Source of the DNA: Diadema antillarum
Lineage: Eukaryota
Length of the DNA stretch: 64,000 nucleotides
Reading direction: 5' to 3'
Assembly (NCBI RefSeq): GCF_040938485.1
Contig: NW_027271288.1
Span: 1,116,001 to 1,180,000 of the forward strand
The position numbers were made by a program, and so were the translations under genes. Positions 27,790-52,930 of the stretch are shown here, piece by piece. Each line of letters begins with the position of its first letter. Within the stretch, counting starts at the first letter, position 1. Under the pieces are notes generated by a model. It saw only the letters and a list, made by a program, of their open reading frames with translations. It had not been told where the DNA came from and did no database searches.

Positions 27790-28506
27790 GGAATCAACTC
27801 CAGGCTAAGATGGTATCTATAAACGCCATAATTGCATATATACGTCAAAAAGTGCTTAACAAAAACATACTGGAATTGTTTAATCGTATTTGGGGGACCT
27901 CCGACCTTCAAAAATGACTGGTTCCATGCATGCTATTCATATCCCAGTATTCAAACAAGGAAAGAGTGAGACAGATCCTCATTCGTATATTGAATATAGA
28001 CACATTGCTATATCGTTGCCTTCATAATTTTGTGTAAGATAATGGAGAGAATTATATATCATAATGAGATTGGAATGCTGCTAAAAACATGATATATTAT
28101 CCGAATGTCAAACAGGATTTAGGAAGGGTAGAGGTATCCTTGACACGATAGTCATGTTGGATACATGGATGTTAAGAAAATTATGTATGTTAGATAAAGG
28201 TTACAGTATTTGGTTGTGATTTTAGATAAAACGTATTATTTTGTTAGGAAGAGTAGTATTGTAGTTAAAGATGTAATATGGGATCAACGGGGGATTGTTA
28301 TCAAGGAATTCATCCTTATTATCTAACAGCTTTTAAAGTATAATAAATATAAAGAGTCAAATGATAATTGTCTCACAACTTCCGTAGTGATAGAGGTCAA
28401 ACTCAAAGAATGTTTTCTTAGCTGTTTGATATTTTTAAGCTATATATCCTATAATGATGAATCGGCTGCTACCACGTTTGTATGCTGATGATATCGCTGT
28501 GTGGAT
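27790..28506 (+). pseudogene. Degenerate non-LTR (I-group-like) reverse transcriptase fragment
   Basis: Frameshifted remnants of RT motifs in order: STPG*DGI, IPVFKQGK, YRHIA, CKIMERII, QTGFRKGR and LYADDIAVW (TATGCTGATGAT at 28481). Confidence 0.85.
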
Positions 28507-28597
28507 TTTTTAAGCAAAAAATAAAAAAAGTGCTGCTGAAAACTGCTTATCCTGATTGTGGCGAGCCATTGGAGTTAAAAAAATCTAGTCAAAAGGG

Positions 28598-28636
28598 GCC
28601 TGAGCTTTCGATCCTAGCAGAATCTTCGTCAGAGGC
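28598..28636 (-). ncRNA. Minimal type I hammerhead ribozyme (Penelope/retrozyme type)
   Basis: Minus strand reads GCCU-CUGACGA-A-GAUUCU-GCU-AGGAUC-GAAA-GCUC-AGGC: stem I GCCU/AGGC, conserved core, 6-bp stem II, palindromic AGCU mini-stem III, CUC cleavage triplet. Confidence 0.8.
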
Positions 28637-28930
28637 AAAGTGACAAAGGTTGACAGGCAAGGAAAGCAATCACTATTTATAGGGACTGCACAATAACAAA
28701 AACAATCATGGGAGGGCTATTTGGGACACAGAACAAAGAAAATAAAAGGGAAAGGTCGGAGGTCATGGGCAAGGAGCCCAACAGGTAAAGGGAGGGGGAT
28801 TAAAGCAGGAGGGTGGACAGACAAAAGCAGAGGAGGGTCAAGGGCCCTAATGATCCTGAGGACCAAGGGGGCAACCTAAGAACGATAAGGATGAAAAGGG
28901 AGGCAACATCAATCAAGATAATGAACAACA

Positions 28931-29087
28931 GGGGGGTGTTTCATCAATGTTTGTCAGCGCTGACAATCACCATAGTAACAGTCAGTGACCAGAGCATCTC
29001 ATTCAATCAAAAACAAGGATTTTGCTGAAATTGTCAGCGCTGACAACTTGTCAGTGCTGACAAACGTTGATGAAACATCCCCCCCCC
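28931..29087. mobile_element. MITE, same family as 23084-23241, opposite orientation
   Basis: Same TIRs; internal sequence is the reverse complement of the 23084 copy; CAG/CTG at the junctions. Confidence 0.8.
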
Positions 29088-31262
29088 TGTTGTTAATTAT
29101 CTTGTTTGATGTTGCCTCCCTTTACCTTTCATCCTGATCCTTCTCAGGTTGACCCCCCTGAAGGATAAAGAAAGGGAAAAAGTGAAATAGCAACAGTATG
29201 AGGGGGGGGGGGGGGCGGAGCAAGCAGCGAGCCCAAACCTGATGTACCAAGAAGAGGCAACAAAATGAAAGGCGACATGAGAGTCAACCAGCAAATACAA
29301 GTTACTAAACAGAGCAAAGAAGGCCTATAAAATATTTGAAATAACAATAACATTAATGATAACATTGCTTATATAATAATGATTTTTTTTCTGGGGGGGG
29401 GGGTAAAATCTGAAATTATCAGAAAAGAAACTGCAGTGCTGTGCTTATTTATCTTATACGAATGTAGTAAATGTTGGAAATGACTTTTTCAGTAGAAAAA
29501 ACTGTTACTCTCTAAAAAGAAATCGAGTGAAAATACATATGGTATTTATCATATTATGGTATTTACTAATAAAGAAAGGTCATACTGGTGTGAATTCATG
29601 TATTAATGTTTTGAAGTTAGAGCAAGTTTCAGTATTATAAAATACAATATCTGATATGAGAAGACACGTTCTATAGTAATTTGAATCGGTCAAATTATAG
29701 AAAAAATAAGTTGTCAAAAGGAATTAATTTGATGAGACGTGTATCTGCTGCATCATGAGAAGTGATATTCATGTCAGCGGCCTCAATTTGATGTATAAAT
29801 GTGTATCTTATTAGATCAATAGTTACTTTGCTTCAGAGGTGAGTGCCTGCAAGACTTATCCTCGTTTTACTCTATGCAATAGCAATGTCTATGAGGTTAG
29901 TTACTGGAGCAGTACTCTGTCAAGTGTCTTCTTTCTACGTCTTCAGAAGCTCTTTAAGCGGAGTGTGGAGAGATGCCTTTATAGAACTCAGACATCTACG
30001 TTCACCATTGGTTGATAGATTGAAATACACAATGTTAATATCTAGTACCAACCACCCCACAAGATTTAACCTGGACTATATGATATCACACAAGAAAATT
30101 ATGAAGAAAATAAGAAATATCAACCCATATAGCTGTTCGATTTACAACAATTATGTGTAAGTATGAAATGTCTGTGCACCGTTGCAGGGCACCCTCCCAG
30201 GCAGATGGTAGAACCTGAAACATTCAAAACATGGTAAGCAAATCTGAATTTTAAAGTAATTTTTAAATGATTATAACGCGGGGTATGTGCAACATAACAA
30301 GCCTATTCTGGCTTTCTACGCGCATACCATTTTCCGATCAACCAAACACACAATGTTAATGAGTTTCTGTTCTTTATTATTGTACCTGTGATATCTGTTT
30401 TCCCGATGTGGTTTTTTATTCTTTTGTCTTTATCATAATCTCGCCTTGTTTTGTTGTCGTTTGCATTGTTTTTTAACTCACTTTTTGTATACAATTTGCT
30501 CATAATTATTCACATGTATTTTTGTATTATTATATGAATCGGAAATAAAGATTGAATTGAATTGAATAAGATATGATTGCTCATCAAACTATAAGGGAAT
30601 ACGAACATTTTAATGGATTCTTTCACATTGTAATATCCATGGTAATATTCCAAGTGGTTGACTCTCTCGGGACGCAAAATTGCAGCCTTGAAGAGAATAA
30701 TAATAGGCCTATATAGTGTATACGGCCGGCAATGACTGGAGGACCTCTGGTCTATGATAAAAGATTGGACATCAGGCTCTTCGGTACGATCTGGCAGTCA
30801 GACAGTCGTGGGATGCGTCCGATAGAGGGCGACATTTGTAACCGGCACTGACAGTACCGTCAGTGTATACATCAAAGCCACCGTACAGCAGTACACCCGC
30901 TTGTCTGCGACTCTCTCCACGTACCCCAGGCCCACCACAGAGAGTTCTTTTAGCTAGCTGTAGCTGTGCGTACTCGATCCACTCGACACCTGCAGCACCT
31001 CCACCAGCAGAGCTTCCGGCCGGCCGCGACGTCGGCGACCGAGTCACACCGATACCGACCAACAATACTGAGCTGCTGACTGATACTCTGCAAAGCTTGG
31101 ATGGGTTCGTTAGTTTGTTGTTATCTGTTTCTCATACTAATACCACCCCCCATTATCTTCTAGACCTAGTGGGACGTTGCATCTGTCTGCAGTTGGGAAA
31201 GGGCGTTTGTATCACCATGCCTGATTATGAATTTTATGATCACTCACTCAGTTAAAGTCACA

Positions 31263-34650: not shown

Positions 34651-36830
34651 TGTGAACTGTAGGCTTGACCGAGTGTCTGGTGTTGTATAAATGGGGTTGC
34701 TGAAAACTGCGTGTTTCAGTCTTGTGTGTATTGATTCTGTTTGGTGTGAATAGTGGGCAGAATATACTCCAAAACTTGGCATTTTTCTTTTTTTTTTTTT
34801 ACGAATTGTGCATTTGTATCCCAGTCCGGCAGTCCTTTTTGTTCTAAATCTGTTGAAAATGATTTTTTTTTTTCGCTTTTTGATGGTCTCTCTTTTATAG
34901 TATATACATGTATCCCCTGTGCAGGAAAATCCATTGTTTTTACACAGGACTTCGATGTAAAACAGCTTTTAGCTGATCGTTTTTATCCTGTATAAATATG
35001 TTTCAATAAATAAATAAATAAATAAAAATCATCATATCTTTAATATTGAGTTGATAATGCTGTGTAGATATCATGCACTGTATAAAGTCACTGCCCTGTG
35101 TTGCACCCCAAATGAAAAGGAGAACAAGGTTGAAAGAGAGCAACGGACAAGAAAGGGGGGGGGGGGCTGAAATACGCAATGAGACCGAGAGGGAGGAGAG
35201 AGAGAGAGAAAGAGAGAGAGGAGTAGTCAGACAGACAGGCGGAGAAAGGAAAAAGAGGGGAATCATCTCAAACCAGAGAGTATTGAAAACCTAGTATTGA
35301 CTAATTTATTTCTTATATCATCCAACATAAGTTTGTGTTCTCATAAGTTCTGTTTAAATCTTCCAATGTGTACCATTTACCAATTAAGCGTTAAAATGCA
35401 CAAACTTCTTCACTACACAGCACTGTACCAGTATCAATAATGTTTTCATCCTCTCACTTTTGTCAAAAGCAAAAACAATCTCTCTTTTCCCTGTCTACCA
35501 GTGAGCATATAATTAGTCTCTTCGCTTGGGAGTATGGCTGGTAGTTGACATAAAGAAACCACTTCTTGCCCTCTTGGTTCTCTCTATTGTTTAACTCTTC
35601 CAGTCTGGAATATATTCTGACCCACGGAAAACCTATGAACCCTCCCATTTCCAGTGCGCACAGAGCACTTTCCCCTGGGGTCTAGTGGTTTGGCGCTTCC
35701 AAGATAAAACAGTGACTGGGCTGCAGTGGAATGCACTTGTGGTTAGTCTAGCGGGCTTGGACAAGCATGCATGGGGTGTGTTCTTATACTTTCCACTGTG
35801 TGAACTATTCCCCTGTTCGATTTCACTGTATGTGATGTGTTCATACTGCCCTTCCATTACCATAACTTGCTGCTTAACATCCTTGCAAAGTTAACACATA
35901 AATTCAAAGTTTCTTACTCAATTATGGCAAGAAAAGTAAATACATTATACATGGAGCACACATCATAGGATAATATACAGTGTACGTTGACAGTCATACT
36001 CATACATGTAAAACACTTCATTCATTCACTTCAACATATCAAGATTAAAGTTAATCTTGGTCACATAAAATGTTAAAATACATATTTCTTTACACCAACT
36101 ATGGATACAATATAGATGATAATAGCAATTTATCAATCACGGTGCACGTACCTCTGACAAAGCAATCAGTATCAGTTATATCTCTGTAATTATAACTTCA
36201 TCATCTTTTCAACTTGGACTTTCTTTGGCTCTAAAATTATGGCAAAGTTCCAATATAAATTGATTTTATGCTTCAATGAATGTTACAACATTAAACTACC
36301 ATGTTGAAAATTAAATCAAAGCAGTTTAACATATAATCTGATATAAAGATAATGGATAAGAAAGTGTGTTTCTTACCTATTGAAAGAAGAAGAAAGAATC
36401 CACGTGATGCTTGAATGGTGGTGATGAGCACAACTACTGACCTCCACCAATACCGCATCACCATGGATCCACCTTGCACCCTCCATAGGGCTGGGATGCT
36501 TCACTCTCGGATTGGGGTGGGACATGGTGTTTCCTTGGAGGGACAACTTGAGTATTTAGGGGATAATTGTATTGCTGTTGTGGGGGGGGGGGGAGGGGCT
36601 GTATGCTTGGTTTCTGTTAGTACCCATTCTCAAAATGTGTTTTGTCTATAATTACGTAATAATTAAACAACTGCTTCAAAAATTTGTAGGGGGGTCGTAT
36701 TTGTGGGGGCTCCACAAAGCTGCGTTCATCTGTTTTTACCAGTGATTGGTCAGATATCATCTACCTCTCCCATTTACTCATGTTTGTCTTCTCTTCATTG
36801 TTTATTGACCAGTGCATTCCAGTTAGTGCC

Positions 36831-37601
36831 ATGGCCAATACACAGCCTCCCAAGCCACGGATGCTTCTAGCCATCGACTGTGATCATACCATCATTGATG
36901 GAAACTCGGACACCTGGATCATGGCCCTTCTCCCTGACCACATGGTTCCTAAGGACATCCGCCGCCGACTCAAAAATGACCACAAGAGTTGGACCATCTA
37001 CATGGGTGAGGTGTTTGAGTACATGAAGTCAGTGGACATCAAGGAGGATGCTATTCGTGCATCTATTGCTGGGATTCCCCTGGTTCCAGGCATGAAGGAG
37101 CTCTTGGCATACCAGCAATCAAGTTCTCAAGTTGACACCATCATTGTTTCTGATTCCAACTCCTACTTTATCAATGTTATCTTAGCAACACATGGCTTTG
37201 AAGATGGAGTTCAAGGTATTTTCACTAATCATGCCGAGTTTGACTCCGAGGGGTGTCTTAGAATCCACTTCTCCAACCCCCACACTTGCCCTCGACGATG
37301 CCCCAAAAACCTGTGCAAGCACACGTCAATCCAGAAGTTTCGTGAGGAGCAAGAAAGTGCTGGGGTGGTATACGATAAGATTTGCATGATTGGAGATGGT
37401 CAGAATGACCTGTGTCCGTGCTTTTTCCTGAAAGAAAGTGATTATGTGTTCCCAAGGAAAGGCTATACTCTGGCTAAACTTCTTGCAGAGTTGCAGAACG
37501 GACAGGGAGAGAAGTGTTTGGCTTCTGTGGTTCCATGGAGCTCCGCCACTGAAATCTTAGATGTTGTCAAAACTTTTGTTGACAGTGGTACATCATGTTA
37601 G
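36831..37601 (+). CDS. PHOSPHO2: PHOSPHO2/PHOSPHO1-family HAD phosphatase (pyridoxal phosphate / phosphoethanolamine phosphatase-like), 256 aa
   Basis: Motif I IDCDHTIIDGNSD (DxDxT), motif II SDSNSYFI, Cys loop HTCPRRCPKNLCK, motif IV GDGQND and VFPRKGY all match the family. The ORF-track start (36780) lies in a polypyrimidine tract ending in AG at 36812, so the likely start is ATG 36831. AATAAA at about 37728. PHOSPHO1 versus PHOSPHO2 orthology is unresolved. Confidence 0.93.
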   Translation: MANTQPPKPRMLLAIDCDHTIIDGNSDTWIMALLPDHMVPKDIRRRLKNDHKSWTIYMGEVFEYMKSVDIKEDAIRASIAGIPLVPGMKELLAYQQSSSQVDTIIVSDSNSYFINVILATHGFEDGVQGIFTNHAEFDSEGCLRIHFSNPHTCPRRCPKNLCKHTSIQKFREEQESAGVVYDKICMIGDGQNDLCPCFFLKESDYVFPRKGYTLAKLLAELQNGQGEKCLASVVPWSSATEILDVVKTFVDSGTSC

Positions 37602-50328: not shown

Positions 50329-52869
50329 ATGAGCAAATCTGACCTGCAGTCTCTGTAATGGTGGAATCGATGACAACAAAGCACATAAAAAAAAAAAAAA
50401 TGATCCCTTGAGAACTGGTGTCCACAGTTCATAAGAAAACTCCCCTTTTAATGTTTTCCTTGAACAGAGATAATGAAACAAAGACTATGCACTGTGTTGT
50501 TTTAATGCTTGTTTGCATCAAGGCCTCAGTGTTAGGATTGGTAAACTCACTGATGGTGTGATAAAGTCTTTCCATGGAGACCAGTGGGACTGCAACCCAT
50601 TGCAAGGAACAGTCAACATTTAGTCACAGTTGATACATTTGTTACAGAATCAGTAGAAATTGAACACAATCACTTGCATGCTCCATTCAGAGAAAAAAAA
50701 ATACATACATAAAATAAGCACATACATTCATCACACACTTTTATGAAGAAGTCCGAGATATAAATTGTATACACTATGAACAGAACAGACCTCGTACAGC
50801 AGGTCTACGTACACTGTATTATACTACCAAGAGGGAATTCCTGGATTACCTTCAACACCCTTACTGAAATAAAATCACTCCTAAAATCTTGTACTTGCCC
50901 GTGAGTCGATTCACTTTACTCTGTATACACAGGCAGATTTAAAGGTTAAATATGATTTCCATACACGTGCAGACACTTTTGTCTTTTGCTCTAAAATAGA
51001 CACATATTTATAATACACATATGAAATAATGCTGATGATACAATTTCTGTTGGGTAACAACAAAAATGTGAAATATTACCCAAAAAAGTTTACCAGATGT
51101 ACTACAGTCTCAGAGCATTATACGCGATTGTGATTACGAAGTAATTTTTATAACCAATTGTGGATAATCAACAAATCGGGTCACAGCAGTCTCCATCACT
51201 CATCCATGCGAGAGTGAATCACACACAGCTTGATTGGAAAATACAACAGCTAGGGAAAGATTGATCATCACGTAATGATTTTCTTACCCAATAACGAGGG
51301 CGCTTCAGGAATAAAATTCATATGCATACAATAAAAACGATTTTACACATTTGATTTCAAAAGAGTCCAAAATAACTTGTTCTCCTGATAAATCGCTTCA
51401 GTCAGAAAAGATTCTTGGTATACCCTTTTGATGTTTTGAATGCAAATTCCACATGGTGGAAGAAGAATTCTGAGTCCTTCTAAGAAAGCTATTGGCTTTA
51501 ATGCACCCCTTCATGTGCAAATAGATTTTTGTTTCTTTTCTCTTTTGATTGTTAGGAGGGGTGGCAAGGAAAGGAATCAAGATGATTCAGATCTTCACAA
51601 AGGCATCTACAGTGAGGATGAGTAGAATTAATAACAGCATAATACAACAATGGAATGAATATATTTTGTCTTGGTCCATCTTCTGTAATAGACTCGTTCT
51701 TAGCCAGCCTCAGACTACTTCTGAAATACAACAGGGAACTTCAAGTAGATTTATAAGAATCATATCATTCCTGACCAAAGTGAAGTATTTCTAGCACACA
51801 TACATGTAAATTATATATTTTTTCAGTTATATTTGATATTACAGCTTATATCTGATATTTCATTTCTCTGGATGAATAATAAACATCTCTTCATTCTTTT
51901 TCCAGTTCATATTTAAGTTTCTCTTTTCTCTTACATGCAATAGACATCTTTTACTAAAGAATATTGGACCCCTTGGCCTGCCAGCAAAAAAAAAAAAAAA
52001 AGATCCAGAATGAAGAAATCCCATTGAGGATGTAAATCAAACTGAAAGAATGCTTTAATCATTAGTGCATGGCAAACAGCAATATCACAATAACCTATCC
52101 TAGCTTCATGTTTTCATGCTGCATGTAGAGTATAGGGCACATATGATACAATGTGTGTGGCAGTGAGTCCACTAGCTCTACCTCGACTATGGCAGTGGCA
52201 AATTTCAATGCACCTTGAAAAAGTGATTTTTTTTTTTCTCCTGATGAAAGCATGAATTTGAATGGACTAGATAAAACAAGCAATACTCTTAACATAATAA
52301 TCAATCAATCAAATAATCAATCACAATCAATCATTATCTATCAATTAACCTGTTGAAGACGAGTCCCAAGAATACTCGGACACGTGTCTACGGGAAATGC
52401 GTGTTATAGCAAAATAGTCCATCATAAATGGGTGAAGATAATGACCTGTTGGTGAAATGGTGCAGTCAAGGTTATATCTATCACCAACAAACTTCACAAA
52501 AGGACACATGTGACTCCAATTTGGTACAAATGAACATTGAAAAAAAGCCTAATGCAATATGGAGTTTGGCTTCCATCGTTATTCTTGGTTAAGAAATGTG
52601 CTCTATATACAGTATCATGTATGTGATACTCCATTTTTTCAACATTCATCTGAACACACAAAGATGTTTCCAAAGCCTTCAGGAAGCAAAGAACGGCTTG
52701 CTTACATGTTCATTATCTTTCAAATTGATGAAATTCTCGCATCAAATTGTTTTTTACTGCAACTGATTGACAACCACCCTACATTGACTTACATACATTG
52801 TAAGCACTGAATTGACCAGTGTTTAAGTAGTAGCCATGACAAAAGAAGTTATGGGCATACATACTCAAG

Positions 52870-52930
52870 CAGGATATGAATCTGCAACCTCCTGATCACC
52901 AGACAGGTGTCTTATTCACTAGACCACCAA
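52870..52930 (-). mobile_element. tRNA-like SINE head fragment
   Basis: Minus strand TGGTCTAGTG...CCTGTCTGGTGATCAGGAGGTTGCAGATTCATATCC; same family as 59095-59135. Confidence 0.55.

What the first reader, a model, noticed from the sequence alone, without database searches (positions are those of the whole stretch)
28598..28636. Intact-looking minimal hammerhead ribozyme on the minus strand
Seen: 5'-GCCU CUGACGA A GAUUCU GCU AGGAUC GAAA GCUC|AGGC-3'. The core (CUGANGA, GAAA, NUH = CUC) is complete. Stem I (GCCU/AGGC) and stem II (6 bp, one G-U) pair fully, and helix III is reduced to the palindrome AGCU. Known: this is the architecture of minimal type I hammerheads in Penelope-like pseudo-LTRs and metazoan retrozymes, which are thought to cleave as dimers. 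Inference: the surrounding pyrimidine-rich segment, with TATAAATA about 40 nt upstream, is a non-autonomous PLE/retrozyme family that may be undescribed in this lineage. Predicted cleavage is between 28602 and 28601.
Basis: partly seen in the sequence, partly recalled or inferred. Interest (0 to 1): 0.78.

Follow-up and report, generated by a model that had tools for sequence, protein, structure and literature searches.

The report
Hammerhead ribozyme in Penelope-element tail
The motif is a real minimal hammerhead ribozyme, but it sits in the broken-off tail end of an abundant Penelope-like jumping gene of an echinoderm genome, an arrangement already described for animals, so it is ordinary.

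Summary
It is not a chance match. The 31-nt core occurs about 1,500 times in this 1.75-Gb assembly, which probably holds both haplotypes, against 0 for the reversed control. A covariance model built only from 20 other minimal-hammerhead families of the same genome finds it as the single significant hit in the window (29.5 bits, E about 2e-6).

Pairs of the motif 4.1 kb apart enclose intact 908-911-aa ORFs with reverse transcriptase and GIY-YIG endonuclease. The family is therefore an autonomous Penelope-like element, not a retrozyme. The window copy (about 29388-28511, minus strand) is a 5'-truncated tail fragment with no ORF, interrupted by a 148-bp MITE.

It shows every hallmark of the "min-HHR" described by Cervera & de la Peña (2014). 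Genomic copy ends show no trace of cleavage: copies begin a few nt upstream of helix I and end 18 or 78 nt after the cleavage site. RNA data were inconclusive.

This scan has already reported the same kind of feature several times on other DNA of this genome. It is a known kind, of low interest.

The parts
28511..29388 (-). 5'-truncated copy of a Penelope-like element, covering the 3' part of the pseudo-LTR, the hammerhead and the tail. The 5' limit is approximate. The copy has no ORF.
   Evidence: blastn against full-length copy L061 (positions 586-1103, 78-80% identity) and against about 60 other copies. tblastn with the 911-aa ORF finds nothing in the window.
28598..28636 (-). Minimal type I hammerhead ribozyme motif (min-HHR)
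   Evidence: Sequence. Covariance model hit of 29.5 bits from a model built on 20 other families. The 39 nt are invariant between the window copy and two subfamily consensuses, while flanks differ by 22-33%.
28633..28636 (-). Helix I, 5' strand (GCCU). It pairs with 28598-28601 (AGGC).
   Evidence: Helix I covaries across 21 families: 73 of 84 positions paired against 46.2 +/- 3.4 for shuffled partners.
28625..28632 (-). Core C3-A9 (CUGACGA, 28632-28626), followed by the unpaired A (28625) between A9 and G10.1
   Evidence: The extra nucleotide is A in 20 of 21 families and is listed as a hallmark in PMC4209133.
28610..28624 (-). Helix II: 6 bp, closed by G10.1-C11.1, with loop GCU at 28618-28616
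   Evidence: the minimum-free-energy fold of the 39-mer forms helices I and II. Helix II columns are 100% paired across families.
28602..28609 (-). G12 A13 A14 (28609-28607), the helix III palindrome AGCU (28606-28603) and C17 (28602). Predicted cleavage is 3' of 28602.
   Evidence: The inner dinucleotide is GC, AT or CG, and therefore palindromic, in 19 of 21 families.
28584..28601 (-). The 18 nt from the cleavage site to the position of the family's short 3' terminus (consensus ...GACTCCA)
   Evidence: 24 of 73 sampled copies stop here.
28511..28583 (-). Optional 3' extension ('tail'), ending GCTTA at 28515-28511. This is the family's long 3' terminus.
   Evidence: Alignment of 3' flanks of 73 copies. 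It corresponds to the PLE 'tail' and the two RT start sites of PMC11167929.
28674..28681 (-). TATA-like box (TATAAATA here; TTATAT or TATAAT in other subfamilies)
   Evidence: In the consensus it lies about 30 nt upstream of the clustered 5' ends.
28640..28648 (-). Zone equivalent to the clustered 5' ends of short and full-length copies. I infer it to be the transcription start. This copy itself extends further upstream.
   Evidence: 17 of 72 sampled copies begin here. A genome pattern search gives 34 hits here against 3 for the same design at the cleavage site. L063 is a complete insertion with a target-site duplication that begins here.
28936..29083 (.). 148-bp MITE with terminal inverted repeats, inserted into the PLE fragment
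   Evidence: At least 40 other copies at 90-97% identity, with self-inverse ends. Absent from all other PLE copies, where the equivalent of 29160 joins that of 28935 directly.
29084..29159 (.). 76-nt inverted duplicate of the adjacent PLE sequence (28867-28935), next to the MITE. It is specific to this locus.

Best explanation
The motif is the minimal hammerhead ribozyme carried by an abundant, autonomous Penelope-like retrotransposon of an echinoderm genome. The element has C-terminal GIY-YIG and a Neptune/Nematis-type linker.

In full-length elements the ribozyme lies in the pseudo-LTR, about 0.5 kb upstream of the ORF and again about 0.84 kb downstream of it. It sits 18 nt (short form) or about 78 nt (with 'tail') before the element's fixed 3' end. 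The window copy is a dead, 5'-truncated tail fragment made by target-primed reverse transcription, and was later hit by a MITE.

As RNA, the motif can form helices I and II but has no helix III hairpin. Cleavage after C17 would need two copies pairing through the AGCU palindrome (a double hammerhead), help from the element's protein, or both.

Shown here: the sequence anatomy, copy number, linkage to RT/GIY-YIG ORFs, invariance between subfamilies, cross-family covariation, and the termini of the copies.

Inferred, not shown: that transcription starts about 10 nt upstream of helix I from a TATA-like promoter, so that a full-length RNA carries the ribozyme at both ends; that cleavage occurs in vivo at all; and what cleavage would be for. 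Inserted copies derive from uncut RNA.
For: - Sequence and coordinates.
- Copy number: 1,497 core copies against 0 for the control.
- Linkage to ORFs: direct pairs 4.1 kb apart enclose 908-911-aa ORFs with RVT_1 (E 3e-10 to 5e-11) and GIY-YIG (E about 1e-3, below Pfam's cut-off). The translation shows CX5CxxC upstream of a VVY...C..C...YVG core. Copies are 97-99% identical.
- Window homology is limited to L061 positions 586-1103, with no ORF remnant.
- Older subfamilies are also joined to ORF ends.
- All four published min-HHR hallmarks are present.
- There are 0 differences in 39 nt against 22-33% in the flanks between the window copy and two subfamily consensuses.
- Other min-HHR families: 2,959 pattern hits against 661 for the control.
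- Covariation: 92.8% of cells paired against 63% when shuffled and 21-44% when slid; covariation score 0.71 against 0.17. Helix I, which played no part in selecting the sequences, has 73/84 positions paired against 46.
- A model built from other families hits only this site.
- Termini: short and long 3' ends; clustered 5' ends; a complete insertion with target-site duplication.
- Partial tandems, inverted 5' copies and tails match the published PLE structure.
Against: - No cleavage was demonstrated.
- Rfam hammerhead models give no hit.
- The designed double hammerhead (-16.3 kcal/mol) is less stable than two monomers (-18.8). In 65-nt context, alternative hairpins that sequester both halves of the core are favoured.
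- There is no excess of genomic 3' or 5' copy ends at the cleavage site.
- Contigs from possible RNA runs bridge the cleavage site uncut. Those runs may contain DNA.
- The GIY-YIG Pfam score is below the gathering threshold.
- The clade was assigned from motifs only, not from a tree.
Confidence: 0.87

Rival explanations
1. The 39 nt are conserved mainly because they are part of the 3'-terminal RNA element that the PLE reverse transcriptase recognises and from which it initiates. On this view the hammerhead core is a passenger or vestige that rarely or never cleaves in vivo.
For: The short 3' terminus lies only 18 nt after C17. Conservation extends beyond the ribozyme into AGGCCCCTTTTGAC and upstream TTTGTCA. 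Predicted alternative hairpins (UCGAAAG with CUUUUGA; UUUGUCA with UGACGAA) overlap both halves of the core. No copy ends lie at the cleavage site. Published work shows that HHR mutants do not affect insertion in vitro and that no RNA-seq ends fall at the cut site in Anolis (PMC11167929). Naiad PLEs thrive without HHRs (PMC8557442).
Against: At least 15 families with unrelated helix sequences keep the exact catalytic core, the G10.1-C11.1 pair, the bulged base and a palindromic helix III, and show compensatory changes in helices I and II. That pattern is what selection on the hammerhead fold itself predicts. The Anolis PLE hammerhead does cleave when its protein is present.
Confidence: 0.25
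2. The segment is a non-autonomous retrozyme-like element that is transcribed from tandem copies, self-cleaves and circularises.
For: The dimer-dependent type I architecture is shared with metazoan retrozymes. One locus (L065) has two hammerheads 314 bp apart.
Against: The window holds a single hammerhead and no tandem repeat. The segment is collinear with the pseudo-LTR of ORF-bearing 4.1-kb elements. The junction of the 314-bp derivative occurs only at two places, probably the two haplotypes of one locus.
Confidence: 0.03
3. The motif is a chance resemblance to a hammerhead in pyrimidine-rich repeat DNA.
For: Rfam models give no hit. The loose core pattern is common in the window, with 11 hits against 4.6 expected.
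Against:: high copy number, invariance between subfamilies, covariation across families, and a significant hit from an independent model.
Confidence: 0.01

Closest known systems
min-HHR of metazoan Penelope-like elements (Cervera & de la Peña 2014, PMC4209133)
   Same: Type I topology. Short helix I (4 bp) and long helix II (6 bp). An unpaired base between A9 and G10.1, and a G10.1-C11.1 pair. No helix III hairpin, only a palindromic 15.2-16.2. Located in both pseudo-LTRs flanking an RT ORF. Thousands of mostly solitary copies, with frequent close pairs on opposite strands. Many sequence families per genome with compensatory changes.
   Different: Nothing in kind. This host (an echinoderm) and this sequence family are not named in the papers I could read. 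Within this family the motif is nearly invariant rather than highly variable.
Poseidon PLE of Anolis carolinensis (PAc; Frangieh et al. 2024, PMC11167929)
   Same: Two alternative 3' termini ('tail') that match two RT start sites internal to the RNA. No sign that cleaved RNA is the template for insertion. The hammerhead needs help to cleave.
   Different: In PAc the ORF starts inside the hammerhead. Here the ORF starts about 0.5 kb downstream of it. Here the tail is about 60 nt rather than 30-40 nt. The linker motif points to the Neptune/Nematis type, not Poseidon.
Metazoan non-LTR retrozymes (de la Peña et al. 2020, PMC7229834; 2026 preprint 10.64898/2026.07.22.740005)
   Same: Dimer-dependent type I hammerheads related to those of PLEs.
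   Different: Retrozymes are short tandem units that give circular RNAs. Here the hammerhead is part of a 4.1-kb autonomous element, and the window copy is a solitary truncated tail.
Rfam Hammerhead_1 (RF00163)
   Same: The same catalytic core and type I topology.
   Different: The Rfam model expects a helix III hairpin. This motif scores below every reporting threshold.

Membership tests
Hammerhead ribozyme (catalytic core) | C3 U4 G5 A6 N7 G8 A9, G12 A13 A14, the A15.1-U16.1 pair, and H17 at the cleavage site | tested here: met
   CUGACGA ... GAA A-GC-U C, read directly from the sequence. The A15.1-U16.1 pair can only form between two copies.
Hammerhead ribozyme (catalytic core) | Site-specific self-cleavage 3' of position 17 | not testable with these tools
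   The only runs available were assembled contigs of uncertain RNA origin. They bridge the site. Genomic copy ends give no trace of cleavage.
min-HHR of metazoan PLEs (PMC4209133) | [quoted passage not shown] | tested here: met
   A at 28625. It is A in 20 of 21 families of this genome.
min-HHR of metazoan PLEs (PMC4209133) | A conserved G10.1-C11.1 pair, a long helix II and a short helix I | tested here: met
   G28624-C28610; helix II 6 bp, helix I 4 bp. The 10.1-11.1 pair is G-C in 20 of 20 other families.
min-HHR of metazoan PLEs (PMC4209133) | No helix III hairpin; positions 15.2-16.2 palindromic, so that two copies can pair | tested here: met
   AGCU at 28606-28603. The positions are palindromic in 19 of 21 families; the two exceptions look like CpG decay.
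min-HHR of metazoan PLEs (PMC4209133) | Consensus families with covariation and compensatory changes within one genome | tested here: met
   92.8% paired against 63% when shuffled; 43 cells changed on both sides against 11.4. Helix I has 73/84 paired against 46.2. A model from other families hits this site at 29.5 bits.
min-HHR of metazoan PLEs (PMC4209133) | Located in the pseudo-LTRs that flank a PLE reverse-transcriptase ORF | tested here: met
   Shown for the family (L061-L064, L067). The window copy itself is a fragment without an ORF.
Penelope-like element, EN+ | A single ORF with RT followed by a C-terminal GIY-YIG endonuclease that has cysteines between GIY and YIG | tested here: met
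   RVT_1 E 3e-10 to 5e-11. GIY-YIG E about 1e-3, below Pfam's cut-off. C..C lies between VVY and YVG in the translation.
Penelope-like element, EN+ | Partial tandems forming pseudo-LTRs, variable 5' truncation, an adjacent inverted 5' copy and an optional 3' tail | tested here: met
   compared with the description in PMC8557442.
Neptune/Nematis clades of PLEs | A CX2-5CxxC motif in the linker upstream of GIY-YIG (absent in Penelope/Poseidon) | tested here: met
   C-x5-C-x2-C lies about 40 aa upstream of the GIY core in the L061 ORF. The criterion is from PMC8557442.
Neptune/Nematis clades of PLEs | Placement within the clade in an RT phylogeny | not tested
   No reference PLE sequences were fetched, and the large protein search was spared as the operators advised.
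Rfam Hammerhead_1 (RF00163) | Score at or above the gathering threshold (34 bits) | tested here: not met
   No hit at the gathering threshold, none at E <= 10 on 251 nt, and none in the genome-wide search. The model requires a helix III hairpin.
Metazoan retrozyme | Short units in tandem, each with a hammerhead, and no coding capacity of the family | tested here: not met
   One hammerhead in the window. The family is autonomous. The single 314-bp two-hammerhead derivative is not amplified.

The most novel reading that the evidence does not exclude
The hammerhead lies inside a short terminal redundancy of the element's genomic RNA. Transcription would start about 10 nt upstream of helix I, about 30 nt after a TATA-like box, and the RNA would end 18 or 78 nt after the second hammerhead. 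Each full-length RNA would then carry one half of a double hammerhead at each end. The two ends could pair within one molecule. Cutting would remove both the cap-proximal leader and the RT initiation site. That would sort RNAs between a retrotransposition-competent uncut pool and a cut, possibly circularised, pool. The genomic record here, in which all inserted copies derive from uncut RNA, fits a role for cleavage as a switch or brake rather than as a processing step for the template.
Probability: 0.12. Interest if true: 0.45.

Novelty: new member of a known kind. Interest (0 to 1): 0.14.

Why it matters
It matters little for this locus, which is a dead transposon fragment about 8 kb from the nearest recognisable gene.

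The family as a whole could be useful material for the still open question of what hammerheads do for Penelope-like elements. It is young (copies 97-99% identical, with intact ORFs). It has sharply defined 5' and 3' termini and a complete insertion with a target-site duplication. Many sister families in the same genome show textbook covariation. The ends of its copies show that cleaved RNA is not what gets inserted, which agrees with the in vitro result for the Anolis element.

Tried and rejected
1. Rfam scans at the gathering threshold, at E <= 10 on 251 nt, and genome-wide with RF00163 gave no hammerhead hit. I read this as a limit of the model, not as evidence against the motif.

2. I tested whether inserted copies end at the cleavage site, which would be a fossil of in vivo cleavage. 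For 3' breaks there were 3 hits against 2 at a control position. For 5' starts there were 3 hits, two of which are indel variants. There is no enrichment, so the idea is rejected.

3. A control pattern for 5' ends, placed 40 nt upstream, was confounded by a subfamily with a different TATA region. I used the design centred on the cleavage site as the control instead.

4. RNA evidence was inconclusive. No listed run is on record as RNA. Four small 'echinoderm metagenome' runs labelled RNA-Seq are held only as contigs. They cover parts of the element and bridge the cleavage site, but they cannot show ends or exclude DNA. I laid them on the young full-length copy L061, not on the window copy, so expression of the window locus itself was not examined.

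5. Retrozyme reading: the 314-bp two-hammerhead derivative is found at one locus only, on two contigs.

6. No PLE ORF remnant is present in the window, and ORFs next to the fragment have no Pfam hit.

7. Thermodynamic folding does not favour the double hammerhead. This is consistent with the published low activity and is not decisive either way.

8. Covariation within the family could not be tested, because the motif does not vary between subfamilies.

Full report
**Observation.**

Read on the minus strand, 28636-28598 is GCCT CTGACGA A GATTCT GCT AGGATC GAAA GCTC AGGC.
- All invariant hammerhead positions are present: C3-A9, G12-A14, A15.1, U16.1 and C17.
- Helix III is only the palindrome AGCU.
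- C17 is 28602, so the predicted cut lies between 28602 and 28601.
- TATAAATA is at 28681-28674.

Rfam finds no hammerhead at the gathering threshold, none at E <= 10 on a 251-nt slice, and none with RF00163 across the genome. That model expects a helix III hairpin.

**More than chance.**

The 31-nt core with up to 3 mismatches occurs 755 + 742 times in the 1.75-Gb assembly, against 0 + 0 for the reversed pattern. The assembly probably holds both haplotypes:
- The window locus has a 95-96% identical twin on contig C1479, including unique flanks.
- Many sampled loci come in such pairs.

So about 750 copies per haploid genome is a fair reading.

A generic min-HHR pattern that excludes this family gives 2,959 hits against 661 for the control. 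These hits fall into many sequence families. I fetched one example from each of 20 distinct-looking sequence types. I picked them by eye for distinct helix II sequences, which biases helix II. Helix I played no part in the choice.
- With the window copy added (21 sequences), helix I is paired at 73 of 84 positions, against 46.2 +/- 3.4 when 3' strands are swapped between families (0 of 10,000 shuffles).
- On a MAFFT alignment of the 20 fetched sequences, 92.8% of cells pair, against 63% when shuffled and 21-44% when slid. There are 43 double-sided changes against 11.4.
- The inner helix III dinucleotide is GC, AT or CG in 19 of 21, and the base after A9 is A in 20 of 21.
- A covariance model built from those 20 families, without the window's family, finds 28637-28597 (minus strand) as the only significant hit in the 64-kb window: 29.5 bits, rough E 1.8e-6, next hit E 0.65.

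**What it belongs to.**

Several core copies lie in direct pairs about 4.1 kb apart. Four such loci were fetched.
- Each encloses one long ORF of 908-911 aa. [quoted passage not shown]
- The translation shows C-x5-C-x2-C in the linker and two cysteines between the GIY-like and YIG-like motifs.
- By the criteria in PMC8557442, this marks a canonical EN+ PLE of the Neptune/Nematis type rather than Penelope/Poseidon. No tree was made.
- Copies are 97-99% identical, so the family is young.
- Left ends vary and right ends are fixed. Left pseudo-LTRs are partial second units, and inverted 5' copies abut some elements. All of this is published PLE anatomy.

**The window copy.**

Homology to the full-length element covers only its positions 586-1103, at 78-80% identity. 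To an older subfamily it is about 83%.
- It runs on the minus strand from about 29388 to 28511.
- tblastn with the ORF finds nothing in the window.
- Older subfamily copies are also joined to ORF ends, so this subfamily was autonomous too.
- Relative to every other copy, the window copy has 224 extra bases (29159-28936). These are a 148-bp MITE with at least 40 other copies at 90-97% identity, plus a 76-nt inverted duplicate of the neighbouring PLE sequence.

**Termini of the family.**

Among 73 sampled copies, 24 stop 18 nt after C17 (...GACTCCA). Another 45 continue through a further ~60 nt to ...GCTAC(A), or, in left pseudo-LTRs, on into the unit. The window copy has the long form. This corresponds to the PLE 'tail' and the two internal RT start sites shown for the Anolis element (PMC11167929).

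The 5' ends cluster:
- 17 of 72 sampled copies begin 4-12 nt upstream of helix I, many of them as head-to-head pairs joined exactly there.
- A genome-wide pattern for breaks in that zone gives 34 hits, against 3 for the same design centred on the cleavage site.
- L063 is a complete 4.17-kb insertion that begins in this zone and ends at the short terminus. It is flanked by a 5-9-bp target-site duplication.
- A TATA-like box lies about 30 nt upstream of this zone in all subfamilies.

From this I infer, without RNA evidence, an internal promoter whose transcript starts just before the ribozyme.

**Does it cleave?**

This was not shown.
- The motif is invariant between the window copy and the two subfamily consensuses (0 of 39), while flanks differ by 22-33%. 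This suggests selection in the active lineages. Individual old copies decay, mostly at CpGs.
- Copies do not end (3 against control 2) or begin (at most 1) at the cleavage site. Inserted copies therefore come from uncut RNA, as reported in vitro for the Anolis PLE.
- Folding gives helices I and II for the 39-mer (-9.4 kcal/mol).
- The designed double hammerhead (-16.3) is no better than two monomers (-18.8). In a 65-nt context, conserved alternative hairpins sequester both halves of the core.
- This agrees with the low in vitro activity of min-HHRs and their dependence on a dimer or a protein.
- The only candidate RNA runs are assembled contigs from 'echinoderm metagenome' libraries. They cover parts of the element and bridge the site, and they cannot show RNA ends.

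**Comparison with what is known.**

[quoted passage not shown] They also describe long helix II, short helix I, pairs about 3 kb apart around an RT ORF, close opposite-strand pairs, and mostly solitary copies. All are met here.

The retrozyme reading fails. There is no tandem array, the family is autonomous, and the one 314-bp two-hammerhead derivative is a single locus.

The papers I could search do not name echinoderms for PLE hammerheads. This is therefore at most a new family and host of a known kind.

Earlier notes of this scan had already described the same kind of feature at several other places in this genome and called the host a sea urchin. I did not test the host myself. The run labels say only echinoderm. 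No earlier notes exist near this window.

**Verdict.**

Interest is low.

Noticed in passing
window 28936-29159: A 148-bp MITE (29083-28936) with G-rich terminal inverted repeats, with at least 40 scored copies at 90-97% identity and about 2,000 first-look candidates. It sits inside the PLE fragment next to a 76-nt inverted duplicate of the adjacent PLE sequence. A MITE insertion with an inverted, rather than direct, flank duplication is unusual.
   Followed up: partly
L002 = G000:C1479:171027-174249 against window 28200-30200: A second contig carries the same locus, including unique flanks and the MITE, at 95-96% identity. Many other sampled loci also come in near-identical pairs on different contigs. 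The 1.75-Gb assembly therefore seems to contain both haplotypes, which would halve all copy counts.
   Followed up: partly
genome-wide; examples L074-L093: At least 15 further minimal hammerhead families with unrelated helix I and II sequences: about 2,300 pattern hits above control. Many occur as closely spaced opposite-strand pairs. Helix III is AGCU, AAUU or ACGU.
   Followed up: partly
L063:991-5158: A complete 4.17-kb element flanked by a 5-9-bp target-site duplication (shared string around TAGAA). Its only terminal repeat is the ~60 nt that contains the hammerhead. This is a minimal pseudo-LTR that looks like an R region.
   Followed up: partly
L065:955-1363 (G000:C137): An internally deleted derivative with two hammerheads 314 bp apart and no ORF. 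Its junction occurs only here and on one other contig, so it is not an amplified non-autonomous family.
   Followed up: yes
window 28584-28648, minus strand: Two conserved alternative pairings overlap the ribozyme: UUUGUCA with UGACGAA upstream, and UCGAAAG with CUUUUGA reaching the short 3' terminus. They may belong to the RT recognition structure or act as a switch.
   Followed up: no
window 36780-37601 (+): An uninterrupted 273-aa ORF with a strong Pfam Put_Phosphatase (PHOSPHO1/2-like, HAD family) match, E 8e-64. It is the nearest recognisable gene, about 8 kb from the fragment.
   Followed up: no
window 52869-52926 (-): A partial tRNA-like match (Rfam tRNA, 32.3 bits, model positions 8-63). 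It may be a tRNA-derived SINE or a pseudogene.
   Followed up: no
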